Below are positions 2,079-48,684 of a stretch of 64,000 nucleotides of DNA, piece by piece; position 1 is the first letter of the stretch; each line of letters starts with the position of its first letter. Source of the stretch: Anolis carolinensis (taxonomy: Eukaryota); the NCBI RefSeq assembly GCF_035594765.1, contig NC_085846.1, positions 13,565,190-13,629,189 of the forward strand. Direction: 5' to 3'. Made by a program: the position numbers and the translations under genes. The notes beneath the pieces were generated by a model. That model made no database searches. It was not told where the DNA came from and saw only the letters and a list, made by a program, of their open reading frames with translations.

Positions 2079-2111
<33 letters not shown>

Positions 2112-5100
2112 CCCCCCCCCCCCCCCCCCCCCGCGCTAGTGCCCTGGAACCCTATGCTACTTCCAAATGCCTTGGTTTCCCCCTGCAGTCTTTCTGATGA
2201 TGATGCAAGGAAAAGAGATGTATTTGGGGTTGCTTGTTTGGGGGGTGGTCCACAGAGTATATAGGGTGCTAAGCATTGGCCCATGCCCCCCTCCCCCCCA
2301 CCACAGTTGCCCATCCCTAGTTTATATACTTTGTACCTCCATACTATGGTTTCATGAGAGGTTCTTCTCTCATGAGAGATTTTTTTTTGGGGGGGGGGGG
2401 GGTTGAATTCTAGATACTATTTTGATGCAGGCATTCCCAAAAGCATGAATATTATATCAAGGGTTCCTCCAGGATGGAATAAAAGGGTGAGAGATGCTGT
2501 TCGTAATATACTTGTTGGACTTACAGCCCAGTTGTTGCATTTCATGGTGATAAGCAATTGGAACTTCCACCCCATAATTATTGAAAATGTCCTGCAGTTT
2601 TCTGATGGCCTCCCTTTTCTGCAGAGTTTGAAAGAAAAACATCAGGAGCTGCAAGCCATGACCCAGCAGAAAAAAGCACTTGCCCCCCGACTGCCTGCCA
2701 GGCCCAGGAAACAGGCAACTGTGTTGCCTCTCCAGAAAGGTGAGCAGACACGGGGGGGGGGGGGGGGTGTTAGGGGTGGGAGGAGTGATCTGGAAGCGAG
2801 GACTCTGTTTTTCGTCCTCTCTTTGTAAATTGCGAAGTCCTCACTCCCTTTCTTTCTTCTCCAGTGGAGGAAGCTGACAAATCTCAAAAGGCAGAGGCAG
2901 AAGAAGAGGAAAGCATTGCCCTCATAACGCAGAAGAACAATCGAAAGAGGAAGGTATGGGAGGGGGTTTGGGGTCTGTCTTTGAGAAGAAGTTCAGTAGA
3001 TGATAGCAGCAACTGAAGTTGTTGAACACAGTTTTTGTCACACTTTTTTTTCACTAAGGGTGACCTTTGGAGTTGTTTTACAACCACTTTCCAATACTGT
3101 TTGAACGTCCCAAGTGTTCTTGGACTCCAGTTCTCAATGTTCTTGACCATTGGCCATGCTATCTGGGGCTGATTTGAGAAGAACTCTTAACAACATGTGC
3201 AAAGCTTCAGGCTTTTACATTTAATTATATTCTGCATACCTTCCAATACAGTACCAAAGGTAGCTCACAATATAAATTAGATGGTGCAAAAGTTTTTTAA
3301 AAACACCCAAACCACTTGAACGGGGAATCGTGTTAAAATGGTGATTTCCAAAGTGGGCGCTACCGCCCCCTGGTGGGCGCTGCAGCGATCCAGGGGGGCA
3401 GTGATGACACCTATTAGGACACGGGGGCGAAGCTAGAGTGGGCGTGGCTTCTTCCCAAGAGTCGGAGACAGGGCTGAGAATCTACACCTCTCCTGAGGCG
3501 CCTGTTGGGACACAGAGGGCGGAGCTAAGGAAGGGGGCGAGGCCTCCTTCCAAGAGCCCGAGACAGGGCTGAGCCTCTGTATACCTCCCCTAAGGCACTT
3601 GTTAGAACACGGGGGTGGGGTATAGAGATTCAGCCCCCATCAGGCACTTGGGAAGAGGCCCCGCCCCCTCCTCTAGCTCTGCCCCTCCTCTAGCTTCACC
3701 CCCTGTGTCTTGGCAGGCAGCGCAGGATAGGGATAGAAGCTCAGCCCTGCCTCAGAGCTCGTAACTCTGCCCATCCCAGTCCTGGCTGCCCATTTGTGGC
3801 CCCGCCCACCTCCCCCTCCCAGCCCTGCATCTTGGACTAGGGGAGAGGCTCAGCCCCGTCCTCTTGAGCAGGAGCCACGCCCACCCCTCTAAGCCACACA
3901 CCCCTTTCCAGGGGGCGATAAGTAATATTTTTTCTGGAAAGGGCGGCAGGCCAAATAAGTTTGGGAACCACTGATTTAGAAGTTTGAAAAGGCCATTAAA
4001 ACAGCATGATAAAATACAATGTAAGTAACCCAAAATAAAATATCATCTGAAGCAGGTCATTGCAAGTCACTGGAGATCTTCCCCCCTAAAACTCCTTCAC
4101 CTGTGTATGTTTCTTCATGTGGAATTATGCACATAATTCATGAGCATGACTGGTGGTACTCAATTGCTTACTTCAGCTTAACACATTGAATCTATGATTG
4201 TTAAGAGGTGTTTTCAATAAAAGGATATAATAATAATAATAAATTTATTCTTATATCCCGCCCCATCTCCCCGAGGGGACTCGGGGCGGCTCACAACAAT
4301 AATAAAAACAGTGACAAATTACACATTGTAAAATCAAACATGAAAAGCTTGAAAGGATATGTGTGAAAGGGGAGAGGAATTAATCATAAAATAGCCTGAA
4401 GATGCCAGCTTAATTGTTTTATTTTCCTTTTGATGTCTGTCCTTCAGGCTTTGGGTTTTGACTCTGAAAATGAGGCTCCCCCTGAGTGGGAGATGAAGGT
4501 ACGCCCTGATCTTCTGGCTTGCGGCAAAAAAAACATATTGGACCTTCTGAACAAAGGCTCTGAAAAGGATCTCATGAGCCTACATTACATCGGCAAGAAG
4601 AAAGCTCAGCTCATTGTAGGCTGGAGAGAAATCTATGGATCGTTTGAGAAGGTCAGTGAATTCTGAGGACACTGTTGCTCAAAGAGAGAATAATCTGAAG
4701 ACCGATATCCCTGAGCCTATTGTACATTGTCAGTTCAGGGCAAATTCATTTCATCAAGGTCTGGTAGGTGGAGGACTGGTCTCAAATTAATCTCTCTTCA
4801 GCTTGTAAACTCAGTAGACTCACACCTGATACTAGCTGATTATTGGGGCAGTGACGAAAAAGGAAAAGCCAATCATTATTTTAAAAACATAAAGAGCTAA
4901 ATCTGAAAAAAGTTACTGTGTATGACTCCCAGAATTTCTCAGCCAGCATGGACACTAGTGGATTTCGGAAATTAGAGTACAAAATGATATCTGTTTTAAA
5001 ACTGGATCAAAGCAAAGGCCCACTTGATCCATCATCCTATGCTGTGTGCCAAGTCAGATGCTTCTTGGAAACTGTCAGGAGTGTCATGAAAGCAGAAAGC

Positions 5101-20204: not shown

Positions 20205-23200
20205 ATGTCAGCTGAAGCCACCGCAGACCAGGCCTCCTCCCTGGAGAATTGCGCACCCCTGGTCCCAACCCAGCAGCGACGGGATGGCGGCGGAGGGGTA
20301 GCTGGCGTGACCTTTGACCTCAAGCCCTTGAACCCTAGCAGCAAGTATGTCAAGCTGAACGTCGGAGGGTCCCTGCATTACACCACCGTGCAGACCCTCA
20401 CCAAACAAGACACTATGCTCAAGGCAATGTTCAGCGGCCGGATGGAGGTGCTCACAGATAGTGAAGGTTTGTTTGTGAGCTTTCTCACCATCTGTCCCCC
20501 ACTTACATGCAGGCAGGCAACCTTTCACCATTTTTGATGTTATGCTTGCCTTTTTCTGTACTGCATTAAGACTACTGTAGCATGTTTGAAAACTTTCTTT
20601 TAATAGTTTTTACCTCCACCACTGACTGGAGACCTGTAGGTCAACTGTGCTCTTCCACTCGGTTTGGACAGAAACATTTTTCTACCATACATGAGTTGGG
20701 TATACCTGGGTTTAACTGATACTGTACTTGGATCTGTTTTGCTTTTCTGCGTGTCTTCAAATTATTTCTAACCATAACAGCCTTAAGAAAATTTATTGTT
20801 GGACTTTCTTGACAGAATTTGTTCAGAGGATTTTTGCCTTTGCCTTCTCCAGATTCTGAGAGAGTGTGATTTGTCCAAGGTCATCCAGGGGATTTCCATA
20901 GCTGAGCAGGGATTTGAACTCTAGTCATCTCTGTTCAGCACCTAAACTACTACACTATGCTAGCTCTCACCTATCTATTTTCTTTTCTTAATGACTGCCA
21001 GCAATATCTGCATTTGTCTCCTTATCAGCATGCTAGCACCTTTTGCATTTCTGTTACCCTTCATATATCTGGTGCTAATAGTTTTAGTGGCAAAACTTGG
21101 CTTTACCTCTGTCAAAATGTTTTATCATATGGCACTATTTAATACTCTTCTGTGGTTTTGTAAGCTGAAAAAAATCATTATACTGTATAAGGAAAGAGCA
21201 GGTTTAATGTATCAAGAGAAAATATCCAGAAATAGATTGTCCTTGAAATAGCCTGAAACAAATCATTTCTGCTTTTTCAGGGTGGATCTTGATTGACCGA
21301 AGTGGGCGCCATTTTGGAACCATCCTGAACTACTTGAGAGATGGCTCAGTATCCCTTCCAGAGTCCCAGCGGGAGCTGGAAGAAGTGCTCTCTGAAGCCC
21401 GGTACTACCTGATACAGGGTTTGGTTGAGGACTGCCAGCTTGCCCTACAGGTAAGTGGCTCCCTGCTTAGAAACTAAAAAGTACATGTATTTTGAAACAA
21501 ATGGAGGATTTTGCAGGGGAAGTGAGCAGTAAGGCCTCAGTTCTCTTGGCTTAACTGGGCCCAACTGTCTTCTAGCTCCACTGCTCCAGAATTGCTGTAA
21601 CAATTCCATCTGGTTGTTTTTAATAATTAAGGATATGTTTGTATTTTTCTTTCTACCCTATCCTCCTTTTCTTTGATGTAGGGCATTGCTTATAATATTA
21701 TGAACTGCTTTGAAGATGATGGTGAAAGGTGGAATATAAACAATTTTAGTCAGTAATGCAGGGTAGCTTTGAGGGCATTTAATAAAACTGATTGACTCTT
21801 ATCTTTTTTCTACCCAGCAAAAGAGTGAAGCTTTTGACCCTCTCTGCCACATCCCCATGATAACATCACCCAAGGAGGAGCAGCAGATTATCTCAAGCTG
21901 TTCCAAGGTAAAAAGGAGTTGAAATAACGAGATCTTGTTATTGGTCAAGCCACTTTAGGCTATTCGGATGGTTGTTCTCTCTCTTGAGTAGAATCAGGGA
22001 AGAAATGCCAGCAGCATGGAAAACTGTTCCATATATCCTTATCCCTGTCATTATTAATATCCTTTTTTACTAACTTGTAGTACAGATTTCCCAATCTACT
22101 GTCTTCCAGGTGTATTGGGCCACCACTCCCATTGTTCTAGATCAGCATGATTATAGCCAGTTAATGCACACAGTCTTCGCTCTAAGACATGTGTATTTGT
22201 TCTCCTGTACACATAGCTGTCATTTTCTAAAAATAGCTGCATTGATTTTTGATATTTTGTAACCAGAGGCATATTGAAGCATTGCCTCACAGATGTTTTG
22301 TCGATAGGTAGACAAAAGTGCATGGTGGCTGTTCTGTCACACGCTGGGCCTGTTACTGATTGTCTACTATATACACTGTTTCCCCTAAAATAAGACATCC
22401 CCAGAAAATAAGACCTAGTAGAGGTTTTGCTGAATTGCTAAATTTAAGGCCTCCCCCGAAAGTAAGACCTAGCAAAGGTTTTGTTTGGAAGCATACCTGC
22501 CAAACAGAACACCAGAGCATGCAGAATCGGTAAATATATGTACCATAGAGTGTTGTACATAGAAATAATGGTAGTAATAAATTCTTGATAGGATTCACAG
22601 TTTATCTGGTTATGCTGGTTTGTGATGACAAGTACTGTACAGTATATAATAAATGTTCATTTTTTTTTGTTCAACAATAAATGTGAATTCTTCTTCATGG
22701 AAAAATAAGACATCCCCTGAAAATAAGACCTAGAGCATCTTTGGGAGCAAAAATTAATATAAGACACTGTCTTATTTCCGGGGAAACACGGTAGGACGTA
22801 CACTTTATGCCCAGCGGGAAGCCAGGGTTCCTAAAGAAAGGTTGTTGAGGAATTTCCCTGAAAAGATGGCCTTTGAGTCTTTAAAGAAATAACAAAGTCT
22901 TTATTGACGAACAAATAATAAATCTTCAAGGAGTCTTGTCCCCAAGGGACAGGCGATTGGCTTTGAATAACTCTGAAAATCCTCTTATAACCTCTCCCAG
23001 GCTGTCTATTATCTGGGCCTAGCTGATCTGGGACCCACTACCAACTCCAAATGCGTCTGGGTGTTGAGTGGACCTACCAGCCAAGGCTTGCAGATGTTTC
23101 TGTGCTGTTGTTCTGTATCCCCGGACGGTCAATATCCCTGATGTTCTTGAAATATGAAGCTTTTTATGGGACGAGCTGGTCTACATCCTATAGATGAGCT

Positions 23201-26200
23201 TCCTAAGTGAGACTAACTTAAAAATGGCTCCTTCCCTCCCAGAGCCCTGAACAAGGGGCGGAACCAAACTTAATGGTGATTGACAGGCGGCCTGTCCTAT
23301 GATTGCAAACTTTTGCAGAAAGAAAATAAAGCTGAAGTTTCTGGCACAGCTGTACCAGCACAGTGGCAGTTACTGGATATGCTAAGTTTCTGTACATTAT
23401 TATCTTGGCACATGGTTTGATATTTACATGAAAATTATTTTTAAATACCTTCCATGTAATGCCCTGGAAGTCAGAATGTTTGTTACTATTCTGTGAGTTG
23501 ACTGTGTATCAGCTGATGGCAAAGACAAACAGTTACATGTGACAACTAGTCTTGAAACAGCAGATCAAAAAAACAATCATCTTAGCTTTTTCGAAGGTTT
23601 CAATTGTATTTTTTGTTAACAAATTTCTTTCTTTTTTTAGCCTGTGGTGAAGTTACTGCATAATAGAAGTAATAACAAGTATTCATATACAAGGTAAAGT
23701 CCATCATGTTTTACTATTTATATTGAATGTAACTTGGCCTCATACCACACACATTTGCCCTGAGCAAATACTCCCACTCTTTTGCTAGGATTGTGAAGAT
23801 GCCACACAACTTTTTCTCTTCCTTCCCTCCCTTTCCAGTAACTCTGATGACAACTTACTGAAGAATATTGAACTATTTGACAAATTAGCTTTGAGGTTTA
23901 ATGGAAGGGTGCTCTTCATCAAAGATGTTCTTGGAGATGAGATTTGCTGCTGGTCCTTTTATGGTCAGGGCCGTAAGATCGCTGAAGTCTGCTGCACTTC
24001 CATTGTCTATGCTACAGAGAAGAAGCAGACCAAGGTAAATCGCAGGCAGTCTTCTGTATTCTAAATACAATTCTTCCATTTCCTGAGCTTTTTTAGCTGA
24101 CTTCATATGTAACTGTAAGTGCAGGTTCAGAGAGATCTTGACTAACCATGAATACATGCCAGCACATTCAGTGGTTTTTTCTCACTTGACTCCTCCTGCA
24201 GTTGGATATACGAAAACTTTTTAGTGCATCATATGAATCTGGGATCATGATTTGTTGCTTTCTTTTTGCAAACCAGCTTACTCTTCTTTGTATCCTACAT
24301 GGGACAAGATCCCATATTTGAGCAATTTATTAATTGATGTTTTTTTTCCAGTAACTATGCTAGCAAAGGTACTTAAGCTGAAATAATCAATTCTATACAT
24401 GAGTACACACGCCACTTGGATGATGTGTTTTGCCAAATTTTGTCCCATGCCAAGAAATATGGCCAGTGTCCTTTTTGTTTGTCCTCTTGGGACTGTAAAA
24501 GAACAATCATGCAACCTATTTTTAATGAACTTACTATCATGATGATGATCAATAACAAAAGAGGCTGCGGTTCAGCAATGTGCCTTTATGTTTGAAGCTG
24601 ACAGTAGCACCTTCAGTCAATAGGTGACAGATTTCCCACTGGATCAGTTTGAAGAGCATAATTAGAAAGAAAAATGTACAGGCCCTTTCCACTTCTTGAG
24701 CCTGCACCGAAAAAGTATATCTTTCCATCAAGGGAGATGATGATTATGATGATGATGATCCTTCTCCCCCTTAAGTTTGAGGAATTAAAAAGGAAATGAA
24801 AATAAATACTAGCACTTAGCTGGCTCTAAAGATGGTCATCCCATAAAAATTAAATTACTGCTACAAATTATTTTTTCTTACCACTACCACCCCCAATAGA
24901 TCATGACAGGGCACAACAATGAATTACACATATAGTATCAATTAAAAAATCCATAGAAAACCAGTACAGTAGAGTCTCACTTATCCAACATAAACGGGCC
25001 GGCAGAACGTTGGATAAGCAAATATGTTGGATAATAAGGAGGGATTAAGGAAAAGCCTATTAAACATCAAATTAGACTATGATTTTACAAATGAAGCACC
25101 CAAACATCATGTTATACAAATTTGACAGAAAAAGTAGTTCAATACGAAATAATGCTATGTAGTAATTACTGTATTTACCAATTTAGCACCATTATTATTA
25201 TTTATTGAAAACATCAACTACAAAAATGCGTTGGATAATCCAGAACGTTGGATAAGCGAGTGTTGGATAAGTGAGAATCTACTGTACTTTATAAAAATCT
25301 CTATTTTAAAACACTTGATTTAAAATTATTTGGATGGGCCTGTCATGAGACAGTGGTCTTTACTGCTGTTTTAAACTCAGAAAGTGTGTTCAATTGACTA
25401 ATCTCCTCCAGCACGCTGGTAGCAGAGAATATGAATGTACAAAATAGATTATACAGGAGGCTAGAACGTTGCAAGATCCCCATTCCGGCCCTATGAAGTC
25501 TTTGGTATAGCAATTTGATAGTTTATGAGTCCAGTTAAATTTCTTATTTCTCCAGTCTACAATTTCATGCGGAGTACTTCTTAAATATGGGCTTATTTGA
25601 TTTGAAGATCTAGTTTATATGCATTATCCAACAGAAGATTTAATATACCACCCTAATTCATAGGTTTCCGGGGAGATAAATTAATTTTTATCTTGCAAGT
25701 TGATTGCTATTATTTGCATTTCATATACAGTAGAATTGAGCCTGAGAATAGGACATTTATCTGTTTAGCTACTCAACAAAATTCCTGAAAAGATTCTCTT
25801 TAACCCCAACTTTCTCTGGTTTAGATCTATTTAGTCCTTTGTTTGCATTTTTATCTTCCAAGAAGTTCAGTGCAGGAATTTGATCAACACAGTTGGTTAA
25901 ATTGAAAAATAGTTTCTACTGGATGTATATCCGTGTCAAGATTTGAACCTGGGATTCTGTGTTGAAGCTGTACTCTTTGCCCATACTGTCTCCATTCCTG
26001 TTGTTGGAGAGGATCATGAGAGTCAACGTAATGTTGTTTCCCATGTGCACAGGTAGAGTTCCCAGAAGCCCGGATCTTTGAGGAAACCCTGAACATCCTT
26101 ATATATGAAACACCGCGAGTGCCGGACAGAGCCCTCCTGGAGGCAACTGGTGGGGTGGCCGGTGGAGGTGGGGGCCCCCTCCGTGCTGGTGATGACGAAG

Positions 26201-26295
26201 ATGGACGAGAGCACCGTGTCCGACGCATCCATGTCCGTCGACACATCATGCACGATGAGCGCCCTCATGGCCACCAAACAGTTTTCAAAGACTGA
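20205..26295 (+). CDS. KCTD13: BTB/POZ domain adaptor for CUL3, KCTD13 (BACURD1)
   Basis: Motifs [33 protein letters not shown] and C-terminal [24 protein letters not shown]. Coding exons 20205-20466, 21281-21450, 21818-21907, 23641-23693, 23839-24034, 26053-26295. AATAAA at 27985. Neighbours are 16p11.2 genes, which favours KCTD13 over TNFAIP1/KCTD10. Confidence 0.93.
22330..23362 (-). mobile_element. Solo LTR in a KCTD13 intron, with a nested mariner-like MITE (22375-22791)
   Basis: TG...CA ends; perfect 5-bp TSD GTGGC (22325-22329 / 23363-23367); minus-strand AATAAA at ~22900 and TATA-like element at ~22985. Confidence 0.65.
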
Positions 26296-30019: not shown

Positions 30020-30350
30020 TAGCTGGGCGTCGCCACACCACTTTTCCTGCCACATGATTCGGGGAATCCGGTCACATGACCCCGGGGGGGGAAAGGTTCT
30101 GGCTCACGTGGTGGCTTCCCTTCCCGGAAGCGGCGGCGCCTGGGCGGTCACATGACCCGAGGAGGCCAAAGGGGGAAACCGGTCACGTGGCGGGGGTTGG
30201 CTGGCTGGGTGAATGTGCCGGGCGGCGGGCTTGAGGGAAATCGCCCGGGCCTAAGGAAGAGGAAGGCGGGCAGGAAGGAAGGAAGGAGGGAAGGAAGGAA
30301 GGGGGAAAGCGTCTGGGCCTGCAGGGAGAAGCGCAGGGCCTTCTTTTTTC
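30020..30350 (+). promoter_or_regulatory. CpG-island promoter of the NUFIP2-like gene with clustered E-box/CLEAR-type sites
   Basis: CACATG 30051, GTCACATGAC 30071 and 30147, TCACGTG 30104, GTCACGTG 30182; ETS core CCGGAAG 30124; high CpG density. Confidence 0.75.
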
Positions 30351-30962
30351 AGGGCGAGGTTCCTGGTTTGTTGCGGGGGAAACCGTTTGGGCGGCGGGTT
30401 TCGCTCTCTTTTGGGAAGGCCCCGATCGGAAAGCGCGAGGGGAAAAAAACAACCCGTCAGGAGGAAGGCTTAGGGCCTGTTTCCCAACTCTGAAGAGTAG
30501 CGTTGGCTGGAGAGGGGCCTCCTTAAGGAAGTAGAGAAAAAGGCGCTTTTGTGGGGCATTATTTTGGTAGGAAAAATACATTTTCTCTGTAGGGGATGGG
30601 AGCAAGGTACTGAGTAACGGGAAACGAGAAAGTAATAGGGAGTAGAAACAACTAAAAATAGAAGAAGAAGGAGAAATCACTTTTTAAAAAAATACTAAGC
30701 TGTTTGTCTTGAGATTATTTAGGAGCAGTTCTAGTTGCAAATACCACAGGCCCCATAGAATAAAAGCTTTTCTGAAGGAGTTGCCATTGAGGCCCGCTTC
30801 TGTCTGTCTTGATTGTTTTTCCGCCTGTAGCTTTTCAGGAACTAGGAAAGAGTTAATAGGAGGGTCGGAATACACCCATAGCTAGGTCTCGGGTCTCAAG
30901 GAAGGCCGTTTGCATCGTTGGGGGGTTTCCAACCAATCTATATCCCGGGGCATCCAGAGGCC

Positions 30963-32439
30963 ATGCAGAAAGAGGAACTGGGCATGGATGAGAACCGCAA
31001 CCCAGAAGAGGAGCTGCACCTCCTGGCAGCAAAGAAGGAGAAATGCCACAACCTCAGCAACCGCATCCGCACAGGTGAGTTATTATTATTATTAGGTTTA
31101 GTTATAATAACAATAATAATAATAAACTTTATTTCTAGATCACCCTCTCTCCCCAGAGGGACTCAGGGCGGTTTGCATACATATAAAACAGCAAACATTC
31201 AATGCCACAACTACATCACTTAATATCAAAAAATAAATAATAAGTAATAACAATAAAATGTTAAGTAACATATTAACAATAAATTTCAAAATAACAGTTA
31301 AACCAATAAGAACGTTATTGCACACAGCATATACCTAGACCAGGGGTCCCCAAACTAAGGCCCGGGGCCGGATGCGGCCCTCCAAGGTCATTTACCTGGC
31401 CCCTGCCTTCAGTTTTATAATACAACATTTTTATATCAGTTTTAATAATATAATATTGTATATACATATAATATTGATAGAAATATATAATGTAATACAA
31501 TGTCATACTAATAATAATACCATATAATAATATTAATTATATATTATATATTACATGCAATATTACTAATAATATTACAATATATCAGTATAATTCAATA
31601 TAGTAATATATAATGCTAATATTGTTCTATGCTAATAATATAATATATTGTATATAGATATAAATTGTAAGCCGCTCTGAGTTCCCTTCGGGGTGAGGAC
31701 AGGATATAAATGTAGTAAATAATAAATAAATAAATAATTTTTTGACTTCGGCTTGCCCAAAATCTGAAATGACTTGAAGGCACACAACAACAATAATCTT
31801 AATTAACTTGACTATCTTGTTGGCCAGAAGCAGGTCCACACTTCCCATTGAAATCCTGATCGGTTTAAGTTGGTTAAAATTGTTTTATTTTTAAATATTT
31901 TATTTTTCTTTTGTTGTTGTTGTTGTTGTTGTTTTTGCACTACAAATAAGACATATGCAGTGTGCATAGGAATTTGTTCATTTTTTTTCTTCAAATGATC
32001 ATTCGGCCCCTCAACAGTCTGAAGGATTGTGGACCGGCCCTCTGCTTTAAAAGTTTGAGGACCCCTGACCTAGACCAATTAAAATGACCCAACTACAGAG
32101 GGTGTCTGGCATTAATTCAACATGTTATACCACACTTTTTTCTCCACAGAGGAGGCTCCTTTGGAATCTCCATAGGAGTATTTTGTTTCTCTCCACAATA
32201 TTCCCACAAAGCCCAGTGTTTTTTAGGGCCTGCTTTGGAGCCTGGAAAATCTCAGCCATAATAATAATAATAATACAATTATTTTTATCATGTCAGAAGC
32301 AACTTTATTACATACTGCAAGTCCCTTCTGGTGTGAGAGAATTGGCTGTCTACAAAGACATTACCTGAGGATGCCCAGATGTGTTACCATCCTGCTGGGA
32401 GGCTTTTCTCATGCCCCAAATATAATAGTAATATATAAT

Positions 32440-32473
<34 letters not shown>

Positions 32474-35400
32474 TATTTATATTCTGCCCTATCTCCCCAG
32501 GGGGACTCAGGGTGGATTCCAACATACAAAAAGGCAAACATTCCGTACCTTAATGAAACAAGCACATACTGACAAAATAATCCAGAATTAACGCCACATG
32601 TAAATGTAAAATTAGAACCTAACATCAATAAATTAAACAAAACGTAAGCAAACAAAATTATATAACGACATAAAAATTATATAATGACATGAAACTGCCA
32701 TCACAGCCACTTGGAGTTTGTACTTTTCTTTAAAAAGGTTATCAACTTTGTTCTATTGCCAAATTAAGACTGTTAGGAATCATGGGAGTTGAAGTCCAAA
32801 ACACCCAAAGTTTGCCTATGCCTGGCTAATCCATTATCCCTTTAGTCTCAATAATCTCTGAACTACTGGATTCAGAGTGCCTTCTTACTTCATCTTTTCT
32901 TGCCTCAACTGTGTAATTTCTGCCATGTTTGTGGGCACGAAATCTCATCTTTCGCCTCCAGTGGAGTTCCCCACAGTACCCCCTCTCCTCATATTGGGAA
33001 AATCATCTAAACTAACAGCTGTATTTCAGAGGAAAGAGCTGGCAAAACCACATCAGAGTATTCTTTCACTTTAAAAAAACCCTGTGAAATTTACAGGACC
33101 ATCAAAAGTTGACTGGCAACATACACAAGCAGCCTGAAGGCACATGTACATATACCCGCCCCCTTCATATTGGGAAAATATTGAAACTACCAGCTATATT
33201 TCAGAAGAAAGTTTCTCTCTACCACTAGAGTGCATTCCTGCTTCATTTTTTCTTGCCTCGACCATATAGAATCATAGAGTTGGAAGAGACCACAAGGGCC
33301 ATCCAGCCCAGCCCAATTCTTCCATGCAGGAAAATGTGTAGTTTCTGCCAAACCTGTGGACATGAAATCTCATCTGCTATCAGCAATACTTCAGAGGAAG
33401 GAACTGGCAAAACCACCTCTGAGTATTCCTTGCCCAGGAAAACCTTGTGAAATTCACAGGATCTTCATAAGCCAACAGGCAACTTGAAGGCACATGCATG
33501 CACATACCAGTTACCACATCTTTACAGACTATTGAGAGTCATGTCCACCCGCTGATAATTCTCAATGCACCAGTCTACACTAGCACTGGTTTCCTGTTCC
33601 CACCAGGATACCCCCTGTTCAGTTGCCCATTTAGTGGCTCCTTTTTTTTTGCAACAGAAATCTAAATGCAAGCTGTCCTTTTTGATCTGTAAATGCTGTA
33701 AATAAAACCTTCTTTCTGTCATGCAGGGAGTGGAGCAGAGCTGGGCTACAGGCCAAGCCAGGTCTCCAGAGAAGGTGTGTTATACTGAATTGGGGCTTTC
33801 CTATTCTTCTGTCATGGTGTCTGTGTGTTTTTCTGTCTCAGAAGGGCTTCATCTCACTGCAGGATGAGATAACGTTCACCCTCAGAACACCCAATTCCAC
33901 ACTATAATCCCTAGCCACTCAGTCTTGTTTATTGAAAAAGTATGAAAGAAAATGTGATTGTTTGCAACTCTTTTTATTTACTAGATACCAACTTTTCTAT
34001 TTATCGTACTTGTGGAAGGGTATAGCATTTATTTAATAGTGCAATTAAGCTTATAAATTAAAAGAACTGAAGATTTTAGAACTTCATATTCTCAGACTAG
34101 CAAAGTATGGAAGAACCCCATAGTTCAGAATTTCTAGGATTTTTTAAGCAAATGCAACAATCCCAAAGAAATGAGATTTAAGTCTTGGGTTTGACTTCCT
34201 TACATTTTGGCATTTGTCTCCAGCATTTCTGTTTTTCCTTTTTTACCTCTTTTTAGAAAAGCATAAAAATGAAGAGGCAGGTAGTTTGAAGCTAAAGCAG
34301 CATTCCATTTAACAACTACTTGGTAGCCAAGGGCAACCAGAAGTTTCGTGTGAAAAATGAGTGGGCTGGCGAAAGAATGACACATATATCCAGTCTTTCT
34401 CCACTAGCCTACTTGGTTTCTGTTGTGGCTGTGAAGGAGGGAGACTTATACTTCCTTCACCAGCCTGTTGGCAGAAAGCCTTTTTTTTTATAGTTGCTTA
34501 CCGAGGTACTAGTTGCTTGTCTTTCAGAGCTGGCCATAGAACAACAGGCGCCTCACCTCGTTTGTGTAAACAAAGTCCCAAGCAGTTAATAAAGAGGGGG
34601 GAAGTCAGCTTATAACTTCTTTTGACTTATTCAAAAGCCCAGCTAAATAAAAAAGCAAAGAGGTTAAAACAGTTTCAAGAGTGGTATTTCAGATTTTTGC
34701 TTTTCCTAAACTGTATCAGTATATAGAAGGGCCATTCCTGTGCTTGCCTCCAATCCCTTCTCTGTACATTTAAATGATTGTTTTGGAGGTTAATAAGCTT
34801 GTTATACTAAGGGATTTCTTTTTTTAAAAAACCTCTGTAGATTGGAAAGATGAGCGACACCTTGGGTTTTCCTGCCCATAACACATGTCTGGAGCCTGAT
34901 GCTCTTGTAAAATATGAACCTCTGCTTCTTCCTTTTATAAGGCCAGTGAGCTCCAAACTGGAGAAAAGGATTCAGCATTCAGCAGAAAAGCAGCAAACAT
35001 ACTTTGAATTTTTAAGGGTTCAGATGACTTGGCACCCTGCATTCTTACCAGATTTAAAATACTAGTTCAATAGGGTGCCCTATTTTATTTTAGTTACACA
35101 TGGGAATTGATAAGTCATAACTCATACATATGGGAAGTGACAGAGTAGTGGTAGGACTGGTGTGTCAGGGGCCAGTATAATTTTTTTGCCCATTAGTTAC
35201 AGTTGTTTTTCTTTCTTTCTTGCAACTCACCAGTTCCTCAGGAGCTGGCACCACACTGAGCAGCACTAATGCAGTAGTAAAAAATGGTTCTGGACACAGT
35301 TATGACAAGTTGAAAAAGTAACTACAGTAGAGTCTCACTTATCCAAGCCTCGCTTATCCAAGCCTCTGGATAATCCAAACTATTTTTGCAGTCAATGTTT

Positions 35401-38400
35401 TCAATATATCGTGATATTTTGGTGCTAAATTCGTAAATACAGTAATTACTACATAGCATTACTGCGTATTGAACTACTTTTTCTGTCAAATTTGTTGTAT
35501 AACATGAAGTTTTGGTGCTTAATTTGTAAAACCATAACCTAATTTGATGTTCAATAGGCTTTTCCTTAATCCCTCCTTATTATCCAAGTTATTCGCTTAT
35601 CCAAGCTCCTGCTGGCCCGTTTAGCTTGGATAGGTGAGACTCTACTGTAAATAAAATCTGGGCCCCTGCCTTTATACCAGAAATGAGAGGAGGCATTATT
35701 TTAAGAGATATGCCAGGATGCCTGTGACTCAGTATTCTCCTAATTGTGTGACTAATGCAAACCTTGCTCTCACTGTTGCTGTCCTTCCTCTTCAGGGTCA
35801 TGGGAGTCAAATGGTTATACCACCCCCGCTGAGATAGCAGATGAGCCCAGTGTTCCCCTGAGCCCTTCTAACAGCCTTAACATCCGCAACCTCCAGTTGT
35901 CTGAACGGGACCCTCCAGTTCCTCACCACCCGCGCCGCTACCCTCCCCACTTCTACCACAGCCGGCCCTTCCATGCTGCCTACCGCAAGACCTACCGAGG
36001 GAGTCCCTCAGACCGCAAAGAATGGGGGCCCAGCACCAATGGCCATCACCACTGTGCTCCGGAGGGTCTTTCCAATGGGCGATGGCAGCATCGGCGCCGG
36101 GGCTACTCTGACCCACCTTCCCCATCCTCCTCTCCGGAGTCAGAGCGAGGCGGCACCGTCAAAGCAAGTGAGAAACCTGCTGTGGCAACTAATGCCACTG
36201 GCACAACCACTGAAGAGTCTGGAAAGGAAACATGGTCACTCTTCAGGCCTCTTCCCGCTTTCCCGGTCGATAGCAGCAGCGCCCGGATCATCCCCAAGAT
36301 CTCGTATGCCAGCAAGCTGAAAGAGAACTTGGATCAGCCAGGGAAAGCCTGCCATGTTCCTGCCTCAGCCGTCCGCACCACGAATAGCCTCCCCAACTGT
36401 GTCTTGGCGCCACCCCCAAGTAACTCCCCACCTACTGACAACAGTCGGCGACAACATCTGGGAGCCATCTTCCAAAATGAATGGGGCCTCTCCTTTATCA
36501 ACGAGCCAGGGGCCGGGCATGGAGGGGGTGGCGGGACAGCATCAGATAAGGAGGAAGAGGAAGCAGATCCTGGAGCATGCTGGGAAAAAATGGAAGCTGG
36601 TGACTGGCAAGCTGCAAGAAATTATCATTTGGAAGGTAAGATGATGGAAGAGACCTAGGACTGTGTGAGGGAAGTGTGGCCACTGAGCTATGTATTCAGG
36701 CTTGGGAGCTGTGTGAATATATTATGTCTGTTTTGATTGAATATATTATGTCTGTTTTGAAGGGGATGATGTGAAAGATCAGGGATGCTTATGGTGATGG
36801 TGAAAATGTTTCAGGATGCCTTTTGAATTGTATGGAAGGGGAGGCAACTGGGATAGTACAAGATGTCTAGCGAGGAAGTAAAGGGCAGGTAGGGCAACTA
36901 GGGTTTAGATAAAATATAATTTATCTTCAAACTCTGTGCTTTGTTTTTCCTGAAATGTGCATTTGGTCACCACAGTTTCTTGATTCAGTTAATATTGAAA
37001 GCATTCTTAGTGAGTAGTGAGCTGCTTGACTATGTCCGAGGATGTAGGGACACTGATTGTTATTTAGTAATACGGCAAGTCAGTGTATAACTTCTAATTT
37101 TCCTTTTTTCTCTTTCCTAATATAGAATGGAGTCATATATGGGAACTACACAATCAAGGTAAGTCATGGAATGAACTCCCTGTACAATTCTCGATCAATC
37201 AAACTTAGACCTGTAAGATCAGTGATACAGGTAGTGTAGTACTTCCTGGTCCAGCTGACTTGATATTTTGTGCCCAGCTATCTGTATCTTCACTGCAGAA
37301 CTCAAGGTTGGCTATGTGATTTCCAAACTGTGATTTAGGTGATTACATACATTAAAAGTAGTCTTATGGATTTCTGGAGAATACAGTTGTACGAGTTGGA
37401 GGGATGTAAGAGATGGAGTGGTATTTGGAGATCTTTGAAGGGGGACATTATTCCAAGAGTCAATGTGTACTTTATCTTATTTTTTATCAGAAACAATAGC
37501 TGGGACCCTTTGCAATTACCGTAATAGCTGGATTAATAGCCACAACAATTAATAGCTGGATTAATAGCCACAACAATTAATAGCTGGATTAATAGCTACA
37601 ACAAATACAAACTGATCTTTACTTTAGAAACATAATTTTCTTAATGCATTGGTCAGTTCCTTGTCATATAGCCATTGACACATGCACATAAATACCCCGA
37701 TGAAGCACACTATTTTATAAAGGAAATTTTATCTAAAAGTTGAGACAGGGTGAATTCATATTTTAACATCCTTTGACTTTTTGAAAACAAGACTTTAGTT
37801 GTGCTTGAGCACATAGTTCCTAATTTTCAAGCCTTAATTGCTGCATGATGCTGACTAATCTAGAGCCTAACCCTCCAGTGAAAGGATCACATTGTGCTTT
37901 GCAAAATATTTTCAGTCAGAGAACATAAATCTGGACACCTCATATGTCAGTGACACCTAAGACCCATTAGTCAGCACCATCCAAAGACCAACAGAGCAGG
38001 GCATGCCTTCTGCAGTAGCAGCTATTGAATCTGGATAAGGTGTACAGATGCTATTACAAGGCTGGCTGGTTTTCTGGAGTATGGGGAGATGTAGAAACTA
38101 TACTGAATGAGATTGGGACACATGGGGAGAGGTGCTGGAGACAACCACTGATTCTGGGTGTGGGTTTGCCCTCGATAGTTCAGCCCATTTATAGGATAAC
38201 TGTGTTCTTGTGAAGACTTGTCAGAGGTCTATTATTTCACTAACTTAATACATTAGACTAGGGCTAGCAAACACATTTGCACTGAGGGCCACATCAGCCT
38301 TACGGTTGCCTTCAAAGGGCCATTGATGGAGAATCTGGATACAGAGGGCCAACTATCATATTTCTACATAGCGTTTGGTACACTTTAGTTTTTATCCATT

Positions 38401-38763
38401 TTGGGTCCCCAGATGTTATTGAATTCAATTCAAATCCCACTCTCCTGACTAAAAGAATAAACTGCAGTCTTCTGGATGTTACTGCATCACAACTCCATCA
38501 GCTCTAGTCATGATGTCTAATGACTGAGGAATATAGGAAGACAGTATCTAGAAGGCCACATAAAATGACATGATGGACTAGACTGAATTTGATACATGTG
38601 CATTAGAATAATGAGGCCTGAAGAAACCCTGGGATCTGTTTTGCCATGAAACATCTCTACTGAGTATGTGTGTTCATTTCAACATCACCACCTGTTTTTC
38701 TTTTCCCCTCTAGCTCCTAGCAGAGTGATGGTCTACACGGATACCTTGGACGGAAAAGGTTAA
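30963..38763 (+). CDS. NUFIP2-like protein (~344 aa), compact paralog of nuclear FMR1-interacting protein 2
   Basis: Exons 30963-31074, 35796-36635, 37126-37158, 38714-38763; all introns phase 1, 1035 nt in total. NUFIP2 blocks: GYTTP, KETWSLFRPLPAFPVDSSSARIIPKISYASKLKENL, LGAIFQNEWGLSFINEPGAG, YHLEEWSHIWELHNQ. AATAAA at 39036. Confidence 0.85.
31341..32067. mobile_element. hAT (hobo-like) non-autonomous element
   Basis: Same TIR family; perfect 8-bp TSD ACCTAGAC; carries an L2-type 3' tail internally. Confidence 0.9.
37522..37605. repeat. 28-bp tandem repeat x3
   Basis: TAATAGCTGGATTAATAGCCACAACAAT repeated three times head-to-tail. Confidence 0.9.
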
Positions 38764-40307
38764 CTCCAAGGAAGCCCAGGGGAAACACCGCTAAGATATG
38801 AGGGGGAACATGGGGAGAGGCCAAGCGCCTGCCCCTATTCCCCTTGAAGACCGGAGAAGCCCAGGCATCTTGAAAGGGGAAGCTATGCCACCTGCCTACC
38901 TCCCTCCCTCCGCTGTTATAAGCCCAAATTGCCCCGAGTGGGGCTCATGTCTCATCCCCTCCCCTTTCCCACTGATTCAATGCTCTGGTTTTTAATTTCT
39001 TCACATGGTTTTTAATTTCTCTGGATTCCCCTGAAAATAAAGGCAAAAAAAGAATTTATTTAAATTCACATCTTTGGCATGGCCAGTGTCTGATTCTTGT
39101 CCAGCAGAACACAGAGATGAATAGCCAACTTTGTTACTAATACAATGCTTTGGGCTGTGGTGATGGGACATGAGATGGAAGGAGGTACTTTGAGAGCTGG
39201 AACACCTTAACAGAAATGAGGGAGTTGGGATCTCCTTCTGTGCATCCTTTAAGTATGCAGGGTCAATTTTGAAAAGTTGCCTATTTATATATGCTGATTG
39301 ATGGGATTCTCGTTTCTTTAATTGCTGTAAAGCCCTAATCTTCAAAAATACAACAGGCAATTTTGTTGAAAGGCTATACATAAATACATTTTGACAATTG
39401 TAAGAGCAGCACTTGAATAATGGTAGTGTATTGGAGAGGGTTATAATTGAGAGACTCAACCACATTTCAATAGAATCTCATATACATGTACATATATGTG
39501 TGTGGGCAAGTTTTGGATAGCATAGGAAAGGATGAATACCCCTGTGATGTTTGTTTTGCTGTCTCTTCCTGTTCAGAAGATTTTTGTCTCACTTTCTGTC
39601 CCCGAGAGAACTGGATTTTGAAAAAAAATCGACTTGTGGAATCGAGGATTGGGGATAAAGCTTCAGTTGAGACACCTTTTCCCCATGATAACTCTTTCAG
39701 GAGAGAATTTCCCTTCCTAGAGGTAGATTTCTCTCACTTCCTTTTGTCACACTCTAGTTTTTAATTATGAGTCATTTGTAAGTTGGATGTTTGTCACTCG
39801 TGGACTGCCTGTCTATATAAAAGTCAAAATACTGGTATGTCTTCTGTTGGTTTGTACCACAAAGCCTCCTAAATGGATTGATGGATCTGGACCATACCCT
39901 CCATTGTCCTGTCCCCAACTTAAAATAATGGAAATAAAACAACCATTGAGGGGGAATGTGTTGTTGACGGCTTTCCTGGCCAGAATCAACAGACAAAGAG
40001 TTCTTTCTCCCAACCTGGACCTTCCACAGATATATCAACCCACTTGCCTAGTTTCCAACAGACCTCACAACCTTTGAAGATGCCTCCCATAGATGAGGGT
40101 GAAATGTCAGGAGAGAATGCTTCTGGGACATGGCCATACAGCCTGGAAAACTCACAACAACCCAATGTAAAGTTATTTAACTACCCATTTCATGCCCAAA
40201 GCAAAATTAAAGAAAAGTAACAAAGCAGATTTGGTGAGGTGGCTCTATGTCACATGACCAAGAAAGAAAGGGAGTAAAGCCGATTGGCTGCTGCTGGGTG
40301 ACCTGTG

Positions 40308-48468: not shown

Positions 48469-48684
48469 NNNNNNNNNNNNNNNNNNNNNNNNNNNNNNNN
48501 NNNNNNNNNNNNNNNNNNNNNNNNNNNNNNNNNNNNNNNNNNNNNNNNNNNNNNNNNNNNNNNNNNNNNNNNNNNNNNNNNNNNNNNNNNNNNNNNNNNN
48601 NNNNNNNNNNNNNNNNNNNNNNNNNNNNNNNNNNNNNNNNNNNNNNNNNNNNNNNNNNNNNNNNNNNNNNNNNNNNNNNNNNNN
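48469..48684. other. Assembly gap (216 N)
   Basis: Run of N. Confidence 1.

What the first reader, a model, noticed from the sequence alone, without database searches (positions are those of the whole stretch)
30963..38763. Half-size NUFIP2 paralog in the KCTD13-TMEM219 interval: possible ohnolog not known in human
Seen: a 4-exon gene (large exon 2, 33-nt exon 3) encoding ~344 aa. It keeps only the NUFIP2 motif islands (GYTTP; WSLFRPLPAFPVDSSSARIIPKISYASKLKENL; LGAIFQNEWGLSFINEP; the C-terminal YH..EW..IW.L..Q helix) and lacks the His/Gln-rich N-terminus. Known: human NUFIP2 (~695 aa; FMRP/Roquin-interacting stress-granule protein) lies at 17q11.2 beside TAOK1 and near TNFAIP1 and SEZ6, whose paralogs TAOK2, KCTD13 and SEZ6L2 are at 16p11.2. 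I know of no NUFIP2 paralog at human 16p11.2. Inference: a whole-genome-duplication sister gene retained in reptiles; its conserved blocks would delimit the minimal functional motifs of the family.
Basis: partly seen in the sequence, partly recalled or inferred. Interest (0 to 1): 0.78.

Follow-up and report, generated by a model that had tools for sequence, protein, structure and literature searches.

The report
Short NUFIP2 sister gene in lizard
This lizard window carries a real, expressed, half-size sister gene of the stress-granule protein NUFIP2; the gene dates from before sharks and bony vertebrates split, is kept from sharks to lizards, was not found in birds or mammals, and keeps just the few short motifs that the two genes share.

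Summary
A 4-exon, 344-aa gene lies on the + strand at 30963-38763, and I also found an alternative 48-nt exon. All junctions appear in spliced transcript contigs from four studies. The large exon scores 99.5 bits on Pfam NUFIP2 (cut-off 27).

The gene is neither a reptile speciality nor a recent copy. Orthologues exist in sharks, rays, sturgeon, bowfin, teleosts (zebrafish name si:ch211-214j24.10), coelacanth, lungfish, amphibians, turtles and squamates, with an eroded copy in crocodilians. None of the family's 73 protein clusters that I could name or match is a short-type gene of a bird or mammal.

A careful tree splits true NUFIP2 from the short clade at 100/100. Both sides hold cartilaginous, ray-finned and lobe-finned fishes. 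Many species have both genes, on different scaffolds. All intron positions, including the 33-nt exon, match true NUFIP2. The neighbours are 16p11.2-type genes (KIF22, KCTD13-type, TMEM219).

Exon 2 has dN/dS of 0.08. The protein is predicted disordered apart from one C-terminal helix. It keeps the WGLSFI motif, whose Phe a preprint reports as needed for G3BP1 binding by NUFIP2.

Public databases already predict the gene, unnamed; no paper found describes it. It is a new member of a known family and moderately interesting.

The parts
30963..31074 (+). Exon 1, coding part (37 codons plus 1 nt). It encodes MQKEELGMDENRNPEE..., an N-terminus specific to the short clade. The 5'UTR extends upstream, because contigs carry about 800 nt before exon 2.
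   Evidence: Searches show the ATG and the GT donor. One search shows M1, D9, E10, N11 and P14 invariant across the 19 short-clade sequences, from paddlefish and coelacanth to lizards. One search shows the last 30 nt of the exon as the loose end joined to the downstream exons.
33727..33774 (+). Alternative 48-nt cassette exon (in frame, adds 16 aa: SGAELGYRPSQVSRE plus the split Gly), giving a 360-aa isoform.
   Evidence: joint 33774|35796 (GT..AG) in runs X1 and X5, with the end of exon 1 as the loose end before it. AG acceptor and GT donor; the same insert is in the Sceloporus and Rhineura isoform X1.
35796..36635 (+). Exon 2 (840 nt), which holds nearly all of the protein.
   Evidence: Pfam NUFIP2 at 99.5 bits; contigs cover it with 0 mismatches in 4 runs; dN/dS 0.08 against Sceloporus and Candoia.
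35849..35911 (+). Motif island SVPLSPSNSLNIRNLQLSERD (aa 56-76), strongly conserved within the short clade.
   Evidence: P58, L59, S60, S62 and N66 are invariant in 19 short-clade sequences.
36233..36331 (+). Motif island WSLFRPLPAFPVDSSSARIIPKISYASKLKENL (aa 184-216), shared with NUFIP2. In NUFIP2 it lies inside the aa 255-411 fragment needed for Roquin binding.
   Evidence: the motif lies at aa 335-362 in a 695-aa mammalian NUFIP2. PMC5775257.
36458..36508 (+). Motif island LGAIFQNEWGLSFINEP (aa 259-275). Its G..N.WGLSFI core is the family's only invariant block of consecutive residues and is the probable G3BP NTF2L-binding peptide.
   Evidence: G, N and WGLSFI are invariant from shark to lizard; the F of WGLSF is residue 511 in a 695-aa mammalian NUFIP2; the preprint reports F511 as critical for G3BP1 binding.
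36602..36635 (+). Start of the C-terminal helix (DWQAARNYHLE), which continues through exon 3 into exon 4.
   Evidence: the only confident AlphaFold2 element is a helix at residues 305-328 of the Podarcis orthologue, pLDDT 86-92.
37126..37158 (+). Exon 3, a 33-nt micro-exon (EWSHIWELHNQ), phase 1 to phase 1.
   Evidence: both joints are seen in 4 of 4 runs; true NUFIP2 of Tiliqua has a 33-nt exon in the same place and phase.
38714..38763 (+). Exon 4, coding part (APSRVMVYTDTLDGKG, then stop).
38764..39069 (+). 3'UTR, with an AATAAA signal at 39036-39041. Contigs end at 39031-39069.
20205..26292 (+). Upstream neighbour, a KCTD13-type (BACURD) BTB gene.
   Evidence: Pfam BTB_2, and the best PDB match is 4UIJ (BACURD1, i.e. 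KCTD13) ahead of 5FTA (KCTD10). TNFAIP1 has no PDB entry to compare with.
3..4663 (+). Further upstream neighbour: the 3' exons of a KIF22-type kinesin.
   Evidence: Pfam Kinesin. Naming it KIF22 rests on reading the translated exons by eye. The shark orthologue of the short gene is also next to a kinesin, one that carries an HHH_3 domain.
55998..57838 (+). Downstream neighbour: TMEM219 coding exons.
   Evidence: Pfam TMEM219 hits at 48 and 43 bits. Earlier scan notes s1-632833 and s1-632819 describe this gene.

Best explanation
The locus is the lizard orthologue of an unnamed second member of the NUFIP2 family, called NUFIP2L here. The two genes arose by a DNA-level duplication before the last common ancestor of living jawed vertebrates, most likely in the vertebrate whole-genome duplications. 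NUFIP2L lies in the block that corresponds to human 16p11.2 (KIF22, KCTD13, TMEM219). It has been kept under strong purifying selection in most jawed-vertebrate lineages. It was not found in mammals or birds, and it is eroded in crocodilians.

The protein is predicted to be an intrinsically disordered adaptor built from short linear motifs. My inference, untested, is that it docks on the NTF2-like domain of G3BP1/2 through the invariant WGLSFI motif. It may also bind Roquin-type partners through the W-LF-P-P-FPVD...PKISYASK-KENL motif, and an unknown partner through its C-terminal amphipathic helix. On that reading it works in stress-granule or mRNP regulation as a compact version of NUFIP2 that lacks the long His/Gln-rich low-complexity N-terminus.
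For: Shown directly:
- The gene model and splice sites are as described.
- Spliced transcript contigs in 4 runs from 4 studies carry the junctions, with empty introns.
- Exon 2 scores 99.5 bits on Pfam NUFIP2.
- Orthologues run from basking shark to squamates.
- The careful IQ-TREE splits the short clade from true NUFIP2 at 100/100, and 100% of 200 bootstrap trees keep each group on one side of a branch.
- Both genes occur in the same species on scaffolds of different size: Tiliqua, Rhineura, Naja, Carettochelys, X. tropicalis, Rhinatrema and Mobula. Salvator, Pelusios, Latimeria and Polyodon also have both genes, but the scaffolds could not be compared.
- All three intron positions and phases, including the 33-nt exon, match true NUFIP2 of Tiliqua. 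This excludes a retrogene.
- Synteny: KIF22-type kinesin, KCTD13-type gene, the short gene and TMEM219 in the window. A BTB gene, the short gene and the Harbinger/TMEM219 locus in Sceloporus and Candoia. A C2 gene, a BTB gene, the short gene and TMEM219 in a turtle. The short gene beside a KIF22-type kinesin in basking shark.
- dN/dS is 0.08-0.09 over exon 2 with dS 0.33-0.78.
- AlphaFold2 gives mean pLDDT 49 with one confident helix at residues 305-328.

Basis for the mechanism:
- G, N and WGLSFI are invariant from shark to lizard.
- The Phe of WGLSF is residue 511 in a 695-aa mammalian NUFIP2.
- A preprint reports F511 as critical for NUFIP2 binding to the G3BP1 NTF2L domain (10.1101/2025.11.30.691455).
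- NUFIP2 aa 255-411 is essential for Roquin binding (PMC5775257), and this fragment holds the shared W-LF...PKISYASK motif at aa 335-362.
Against: - No experiment exists on the short protein. Partner binding is inferred from motif identity alone.
- The F511 mapping uses a rodent NUFIP2 of the same length as the human one, not the human sequence, and the preprint text does not print the peptide.
- The location of true NUFIP2 next to TAOK1 in a lizard was not shown. The 10-kb flanks around Tiliqua NUFIP2 held no called gene.
- The same-genome check for the window's own species could not be made. The species is unknown, and its closest listed orthologue is Sceloporus at 95%.
- Synteny is not uniform. 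Xenopus shows only an NDK gene nearby. Milkfish shows GIMAP-type and TsaD-type neighbours. Bowfin shows an NLK-like kinase, whose human relative is at 17q11.2.
- Within the short clade the branching order does not follow the species tree. Long shark and ray-fin branches leave the root inside the clade unresolved.
- Absence from birds and mammals rests on predicted protein sets, not on genome searches.
Confidence: 0.8

Rival explanations
1. The duplication is ancient and predates crown jawed vertebrates, but it was small-scale (tandem or segmental), and one copy later moved. It was not a product of the whole-genome duplications.
For: The tree dates the split but does not say how it happened. 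I did not test the NUFIP2 side of the paralogy. The bowfin short gene sits next to an NLK-like kinase, whose human relative lies in the 17q11.2 region near NUFIP2. That could hint that both genes once lay in one region.
Against: In every species where contig sizes could be compared, the two genes are on different large scaffolds. The short gene lies among KIF22, KCTD13 and TMEM219 in shark, turtle, lizard and snake. By established knowledge this block is the paralogue of the TAOK1/TNFAIP1/SEZ6 block that holds human NUFIP2. Fishes have two NLK genes, so the bowfin neighbour may itself be the lost-in-mammals sister of NLK.
Confidence: 0.13
2. It is a recent, lineage-specific duplicate or retrocopy of NUFIP2 in squamates that has lost its N-terminus.
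For: It is half the length of NUFIP2 and lacks the His/Gln-rich N-terminus. That is what first suggests a truncated copy.
Against: Orthologues with the same N-terminal exon exist in coelacanth, paddlefish, amphibians and turtles, and more divergent ones in sharks and teleosts. The split from NUFIP2 has 100/100 support, with sharks on both sides. Three introns are retained in conserved positions.
Confidence: 0.01
3. It is the lizard's only NUFIP2 gene, that is, a fast-evolving orthologue of mammalian NUFIP2.
For: No note on a second NUFIP2 exists for this genome in the scan. I could not search the window's own genome.
Against: Four squamate species carry both a 574-714-aa NUFIP2 and the short gene. 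The window's exon 2 sits inside the squamate short clade at 100/99. Its neighbours are 16p11.2-type genes.
Confidence: 0.02
4. The gene is transcribed but no longer has a protein function, i.e. it is a decaying relic.
For: The crocodilian copies are eroded: the PKISYASK motif is lost, the tail is unrelated, and they fall below the Pfam cut-off. The gene was not found in birds and mammals, so it can be dispensable.
Against: In squamates the frame is intact. dN/dS is 0.08 at dS up to 0.78. Identity is 85-95% across lizards and snakes. The motifs are invariant. Clean spliced transcripts are present.
Confidence: 0.03

Closest known systems
NUFIP2 (82-FIP; FMR1-interacting protein 2), Pfam PF15293
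   Same: It scores above the Pfam family cut-off. It has the same three intron positions and phases, including the 33-nt penultimate exon. It shares W-LF-P-P-FPVD...PKISYASK-KENL, IFQN-WGLSFINEP and the C-terminal YH..EW..IW helix. Both are predicted to be largely disordered.
   Different: It is half the size (344 against about 695 aa). Exon 1 encodes a different, clade-specific N-terminus (MQKE..DENRNPEE) instead of the His/Gln-rich low-complexity region. The long Ser/Thr-rich linkers are missing. It has its own conserved island, SVPLSPSNSLNIRN. It lies in the KIF22/KCTD13/TMEM219 block. It belongs to a separate clade that split off before crown jawed vertebrates, and it was not found in mammals or birds.
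Database predictions of the same gene: zebrafish-type 'si:ch211-214j24.10', Xenopus LOC100145486 / XB5854344, 'FMR1-interacting protein NUFIP2-like' and 'uncharacterized protein LOC...' in reptiles, amphibians and fishes
   Same: These are orthologues of the window's gene. They fall in the same clade in the trees, and the sauropsid and shark ones share its synteny.
   Different: They are automatic predictions with no common name. In the full-text library searched, no paper mentions any of these identifiers. Teleost and shark versions are much more divergent: they keep the WGLSFI and helix motifs but lack the N-terminal exon motif.
G3BP NTF2L-binding short-motif proteins (Caprin-1, USP10, UBAP2L, alphavirus nsP3)
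   Same: It works like them only by inference: a disordered protein that presents a Phe-centred peptide, here WGLSFI. The equivalent Phe in NUFIP2 (F511) is reported to be needed for G3BP1 binding.
   Different: There is no sequence homology to these proteins. No binding data exist for the short protein. Whether it would promote or cap condensation is unknown.

Membership tests
NUFIP2 family (Pfam PF15293) | Profile match above the curated gathering score | tested here: met
   99.5 bits against a cut-off of 27, E 3e-28, for exon 2 alone.
NUFIP2 family (Pfam PF15293) | Conserved central motif W-x-L-F-[KR]-P-x-P-x-F-P-V-D ... P-[KR]-I-S-Y-A-S-K-[VL]-K-E-N-L | tested here: met
   It lies at window 36233-36331 and matches aa 335-362 of a 695-aa mammalian NUFIP2.
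NUFIP2 family (Pfam PF15293) | Invariant motif I-F-Q-N-x-W-G-L-S-F-I | tested here: met
   It lies at window 36458-36508. W, G, L, S, F and I are invariant in all short-clade and NUFIP2 sequences examined.
NUFIP2 family (Pfam PF15293) | C-terminal Y-H..E...W helix, split by a 33-nt phase-1 exon; the same gene structure | tested here: met
   Tiliqua NUFIP2 has introns at the same three positions and phases, and a 33-nt exon.
NUFIP2 family (Pfam PF15293) | Long His/Gln-rich low-complexity N-terminus | tested here: not met
   Exon 1 encodes 37 unrelated residues. Only a short His/Tyr/Arg-rich stretch remains in exon 2.
Orthologue of mammalian NUFIP2 | Groups with NUFIP2 of mammals and other tetrapods in a gene tree | tested here: not met
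   it falls in the sister clade, with the split supported at 100/100. It is therefore a paralogue, not the orthologue.
Orthologue of mammalian NUFIP2 | Binds FMRP, Roquin-1/2, G3BP1, DDX6 or ATXN2L; localises to stress granules | not testable with these tools
   There is only motif conservation, set against published mapping.
Ohnologue pair from the vertebrate whole-genome duplications | The duplication node predates the crown of jawed vertebrates | tested here: met
   Both clades contain cartilaginous fishes, ray-fins and lobe-fins. No outgroup was available, so the root is inferred by parsimony of events.
Ohnologue pair from the vertebrate whole-genome duplications | The two genes lie in paralogous chromosome blocks (16p11.2-type against 17q11.2-type) | tested here: inconclusive
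   The short-gene side was shown: KIF22, KCTD13-type and TMEM219 neighbours. The NUFIP2 side was not shown here, because no called gene lies within 10 kb. It rests on knowledge of the human map.
Ohnologue pair from the vertebrate whole-genome duplications | The copies are unlinked in living genomes | tested here: met
   Longest-contig sizes differ for the two genes in Tiliqua, Rhineura, Naja, Carettochelys, X. tropicalis, Rhinatrema and Mobula.

The most novel reading that the evidence does not exclude
NUFIP2L is not merely a redundant small copy. Because it lacks the low-complexity N-terminus, it acts as a low-valency cap that competes with NUFIP2, Caprin-1 and UBAP2L for the G3BP NTF2L pocket and so tunes stress-granule assembly. 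Its independent erosion or loss in archosaurs and in mammals, which include the two warm-blooded lineages, would reflect a change in how these animals set their stress-granule threshold.
Probability: 0.1. Interest if true: 0.7.

Novelty: new member of a known kind. Interest (0 to 1): 0.45.

Why it matters
NUFIP2 is treated in the literature as a single-copy protein. The only 'paralog' named for it in the papers I read is the unrelated NUFIP1.

- Redundancy in model organisms. A second family member present in zebrafish, Xenopus, axolotl and reptiles means that nufip2 loss-of-function work in those animals may be buffered.
- A natural deletion series. The two genes have evolved apart since before sharks and bony vertebrates split. 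Only about four short islands survive in both, and these are the candidates for the family's essential contact sites.
- Agreement with published mapping. One island coincides with the reported G3BP1-binding Phe. Another lies inside the mapped Roquin-binding fragment. The C-terminal helix has no assigned partner and becomes a clear target.
- Gene-content history. The finding adds a lost gene to the history of the 16p11.2 block, a region of medical interest in humans.

Losses of old duplicate genes in mammals are common, so this is useful rather than surprising.

Tried and rejected
- The scan's own notes have no entry for 'NUFIP2' in this genome. The presence of true NUFIP2 in the same genome therefore had to be argued from other squamates.
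- The look-up of the Podarcis isoform X2, the Liasis NUFIP2 and the alligator protein in the contig index found nothing on record.
- Flanks of 10 kb were too short to show neighbours of the paddlefish short gene and of Tiliqua NUFIP2. They gave uninformative neighbours in Xenopus (an NDK gene) and milkfish.
- The kinase next to the bowfin gene was first taken for a possible TAOK2. On reading its exons it is NLK-like.
- A divergent group of four 500-600-aa proteins inside the NUFIP2 clade (P0178, P0180, P0181, P0185) could not be named. The Atlas look-up gave only 'Chordata', so it could not serve as an outgroup.
- About two dozen other of the 73 clusters were classified only by profile score as NUFIP2-type and were not named to species.
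- The first tree alone could not date the duplication, because it had no cartilaginous-fish member of the short clade. The profile search supplied one.
- PDB comparison could not separate KCTD13 from TNFAIP1, because only KCTD13 and KCTD10 have entries.
Exon 2 was used by reference, and the database orthologues (P0001, P0002) stood in for the whole protein.
- No human sequence was fetched or compared. The F511 numbering was checked on a 695-aa rodent protein.

Full report
**1. The observation**

On the + strand, an ATG at 30963 opens a 112-nt coding stretch that ends at a GT donor after 31074. An AG acceptor precedes 35796, and an 840-nt exon runs to a GT donor after 36635. A 33-nt exon lies at 37126-37158, flanked by AG and GT. 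A last coding piece, 38714-38763, ends in TAA. The four pieces sum to 1035 nt, which is 344 codons plus the stop.

Pfam's NUFIP2 model (PF15293) matches it at 99.5 bits against a curated cut-off of 27, E 3e-28.

Exon 2 was used by reference, and database orthologues stood in for the whole protein.

**2. Transcription and splicing**

Twenty public runs hold exon 2 word for word. Fourteen are small data sets, which the tool guesses to be RNA. I laid four of them, from four studies, on window 33200-39199.

- In all four, one contig of 1.2-2.1 kb covers exon 2, exon 3 and exon 4 plus the 3'UTR without a single mismatch.
- The joints are 36635|37126 and 37158|38714 (GT..AG).
- Depth in the intervening introns is zero. 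These are therefore spliced transcripts, not genomic DNA.
- In run X7, the letters hanging off the exon 2 acceptor are the last 30 nt of exon 1.
- In runs X1 and X5, exon 2 is instead joined to a further 48-nt exon ending at 33774, and that exon carries the same exon 1 letters before it.
- This cassette (33727-33774, AG/GT) adds 16 residues. It corresponds to the 360-aa 'isoform X1' annotated in Sceloporus and Rhineura.

Both isoforms therefore exist. An AATAAA at 39036-39041 fits contig ends at 39031-39069.

**3. The neighbourhood**

- The first 5 kb of the window hold the 3' exons of a kinesin (Pfam Kinesin). I read its translated exons by eye as KIF22-type.
- At 20205-26292, on the same strand, is a BTB gene of the KCTD13/TNFAIP1/KCTD10 group. 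Its best PDB match is the KCTD13 BTB domain (4UIJ), ahead of KCTD10.
- Downstream, exons at 55998-57838 hit Pfam TMEM219. This agrees with earlier notes of this scan on the same window.

The 'KCTD13-TMEM219 interval' is thus correct, with one reservation. TNFAIP1 could not be excluded by sequence. It is excluded only by the company of KIF22 and TMEM219.

**4. Relatives**

A word search with exon 2 found close orthologues (77-95% identity, 324-360 aa), all labelled 'uncharacterized' or 'hypothetical', in Sceloporus, Podarcis, Rhineura, Tiliqua, Candoia, Salvator, Naja and others. It also found more distant ones in turtles, in frogs (about 400 aa) and in caecilians (about 455 aa).

A second search with a 460-aa caecilian member also reached true NUFIP2. 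It showed a clean gap between the short group, which includes axolotl and coelacanth, and NUFIP2 proper.

The claim rests in part on absence from mammals, so I ran the exhaustive profile search with an alignment of 19 short-clade proteins. The whole superfamily is only 73 clusters among 1.84 billion representatives. I named them through cluster look-ups and local BLAST. This added lungfish, Chinese sturgeon, bowfin, several teleosts (named after zebrafish si:ch211-214j24.10), basking shark, two rays and an eroded alligator model.

No cluster that scores better on the short-clade profile than on a NUFIP2 profile comes from a bird or a mammal. About two dozen further clusters score as NUFIP2-type and were not named to species.

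**5. Phylogeny**

Three trees agree.

- The first tree had 64 rows.
- The second tree included the divergent fish, shark and alligator rows.
- The third was a careful IQ-TREE search on 39 rows and 596 columns under LG+C20+F+G4.

In the careful tree the branch separating 20 NUFIP2 rows from 19 short-clade rows has ultrafast bootstrap 100 and SH-aLRT 100, and it is present in all 200 bootstrap trees examined.

The NUFIP2 side contains chimaera, shark, ray, paddlefish, gar, bowfin, teleosts, coelacanth, amphibians, turtle, crocodilian, bird, squamates, monotreme and placental. The short side contains shark, paddlefish, bowfin, teleosts, coelacanth, lungfish, amphibians, turtles and squamates, and the window's exon 2 sits next to Sceloporus.

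No outgroup was available. Even so, any root that avoids extra duplications and losses lies on the branch between the two clades. The duplication is therefore older than the split between cartilaginous and bony vertebrates. Inside the short clade the long shark and ray-fin branches leave the deep order unresolved.

**6. Independent support that this is a DNA-level duplicate and a separate gene**

- True NUFIP2 of the skink Tiliqua has introns at the same three places and phases. There is a phase-1 intron in the Gly codon that opens the large exon, a phase-1 intron just after the YH motif, then a 33-nt exon and a short last exon. A retrocopy is excluded.
- Many species have both genes: Tiliqua, Rhineura, Salvator and Naja among squamates, and also Carettochelys, Pelusios, Xenopus tropicalis, Rhinatrema, Latimeria, Polyodon and Mobula.
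- Where contig sizes are given for both genes, they lie on different large scaffolds.

I could not check the window's own genome for NUFIP2, because the scan's notes have no entry.

**7. Synteny elsewhere**

- Sceloporus and the boa Candoia show BTB gene, short gene, then the Harbinger-derived gene that sits in TMEM219.
- Kemp's ridley turtle shows a C2-domain gene, a BTB gene, the short gene and TMEM219 in a row.
- In basking shark the gene lies 3 kb from a kinesin with the helix-hairpin-helix domain typical of KIF22.

These are all 16p11.2-type genes. By established knowledge, human NUFIP2 lies at 17q11.2 beside TAOK1 and near TNFAIP1 and SEZ6, the sisters of TAOK2, KCTD13 and SEZ6L2. I did not test that side here, because the flanks of Tiliqua NUFIP2 were empty.

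The picture is less tidy in Xenopus (an NDK gene), in milkfish (GIMAP-type and TsaD-type genes) and in bowfin. The bowfin neighbour reads as an NLK-like kinase, whose human relative is itself at 17q11.2. I therefore put whole-genome duplication at about 0.8 and an older small-scale duplication at about 0.13.

**8. Selection and structure**

Over exon 2, dN/dS is 0.078 against Sceloporus (dS 0.33), 0.079 against Candoia (dS 0.78) and 0.089 between those two. This is strong purifying selection on a mostly disordered protein.

AlphaFold2, run with the 19-sequence alignment, gives mean pLDDT 49 for the Podarcis orthologue. The single confident element is a helix at residues 305-328 (pLDDT 86-92) that spans the end of exon 2, the micro-exon and the start of exon 4.

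Conservation within the short clade is concentrated in the following places:
- the exon 1 peptide (M..DENxNP);
- SVPLSPSNSLNIRN;
- W-LF-P-P-FPVD-S-A...PKISYASK-KENL;
- LGAIFQN-WGLSFI-P;
- the helix.

Across all jawed vertebrates, only G..N.WGLSFI and the Tyr of the helix are invariant.

**9. How it probably works (inferred)**

A 2025 preprint maps NUFIP2 binding to the NTF2-like domain of G3BP1 to Phe 511. It aligns this Phe with the key Phe of Caprin-1, USP10, UBAP2L and nsP3 (10.1101/2025.11.30.691455). In a 695-aa mammalian NUFIP2, residue 511 is the Phe of WGLSF. The preprint text does not print the peptide, so this assignment is probable rather than proven.

Rehage et al. showed that NUFIP2 aa 255-411 is essential for Roquin binding (PMC5775257). 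The only block of that fragment kept in the short gene is the W-LF...PKISYASK motif at aa 335-362.

My best reading is a compact, motif-only adaptor that docks on G3BP, perhaps also on Roquin, and uses its helix for a third, unknown partner. It lacks the His/Gln-rich low-complexity N-terminus that NUFIP2 has. I cannot say whether it substitutes for NUFIP2 or competes with it.

**10. Comparison with what is known, and novelty**

The protein passes the family tests for PF15293 but fails the orthology test for NUFIP2. It is a second family member.

It is already present in public gene sets under uninformative names. Two full-text searches found no paper that mentions a sequence paralogue of NUFIP2 or any of the orthologue identifiers. 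The one 'paralog' mentioned is NUFIP1, which is unrelated in sequence.

I therefore rate it a new member of a known kind. It is useful for people who work on stress granules, Roquin or FMRP in fish, frogs and reptiles, and as a natural map of the family's minimal motifs. Old duplicates lost in mammals are common, so it is not very surprising.

**11. Limits**

- There are no binding or localisation data.
- The runs are labelled RNA only by guess, although the empty introns argue for it.
- The tissues are unknown.
- Absence in birds and mammals is absence from predicted proteins.
- No human sequence was fetched or compared, and the assembly gap at 48469-48684 was left alone.

Noticed in passing
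window 33727-33774: An alternative 48-nt in-frame cassette exon in intron 1, included in contigs of runs X1 and X5 and skipped in X7. It gives 360-aa and 344-aa isoforms.
   Followed up: yes
window 35200-35800 (intron 1, just upstream of exon 2): A repeat with enormous summed contig depth in the transcript runs (up to about 200,000), with many short contigs at 95-99% identity and a recurrent G>A at 35466. It is probably an abundant, transcribed interspersed repeat family.
   Followed up: no
window 1-5000 and 20205-26292: A KIF22-type kinesin lies about 15 kb upstream of the KCTD13-type gene. By my knowledge of the human map, seven or more genes (MAZ through ASPHD1) lie between these two in human. 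The shark orthologue of the short gene is also next to a KIF22-type kinesin (L005 12772-19691), so the compact order may be the old one.
   Followed up: partly
L007 18034-25164 (bowfin): The gene just downstream of the bowfin short NUFIP2-like gene reads as an NLK-like kinase (RPIGYGAFGVVW, KRVFRELRMLCFFKHDNV). Human NLK is at 17q11.2. This may be the second fish NLK gene, another sister gene lost in mammals.
   Followed up: partly
P0187, P0192 (Alligator and another crocodilian): The crocodilian copies keep the exon 1 motif, WGLSFI and the start of the helix. They have lost most of exon 2, including PKISYASK. The annotated alligator model ends in an unrelated, Arg/Pro-rich and then hydrophobic tail. 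This looks like erosion or a mis-joined model. No bird relative was found.
   Followed up: partly
P0034/P0031 (Rhinatrema), P0026/P0036 (Microcaecilia), P0173/P0221/P0222 (Thalassophryne): Caecilians carry two copies of the short gene on the same scaffold, about 80% identical to each other. A toadfish has three loci. These are lineage-specific extra duplications.
   Followed up: no
P0051, P0116, P0133, P0143 (catfishes, characins): Proteins of 485-528 aa annotated 'NUFIP2-like' in ostariophysan teleosts are not orthologues of the short gene. They fall inside the ray-fin NUFIP2 clade as a second, fish-specific copy.
   Followed up: yes
P0178, P0180, P0181, P0185: A tight, very divergent group of 500-600-aa NUFIP2-type proteins of unknown species sits inside the NUFIP2 clade on a long branch. 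The Atlas says only 'Chordata'. If they are cyclostome, they would bear on the date of the duplication.
   Followed up: partly
window about 30270-30962: The transcript contigs carry about 800 nt upstream of the exon 2 acceptor. This implies a 5'UTR of roughly 700 nt, if exon 1 is one piece, running into the G+C-rich stretch at 30080-30680.
   Followed up: no
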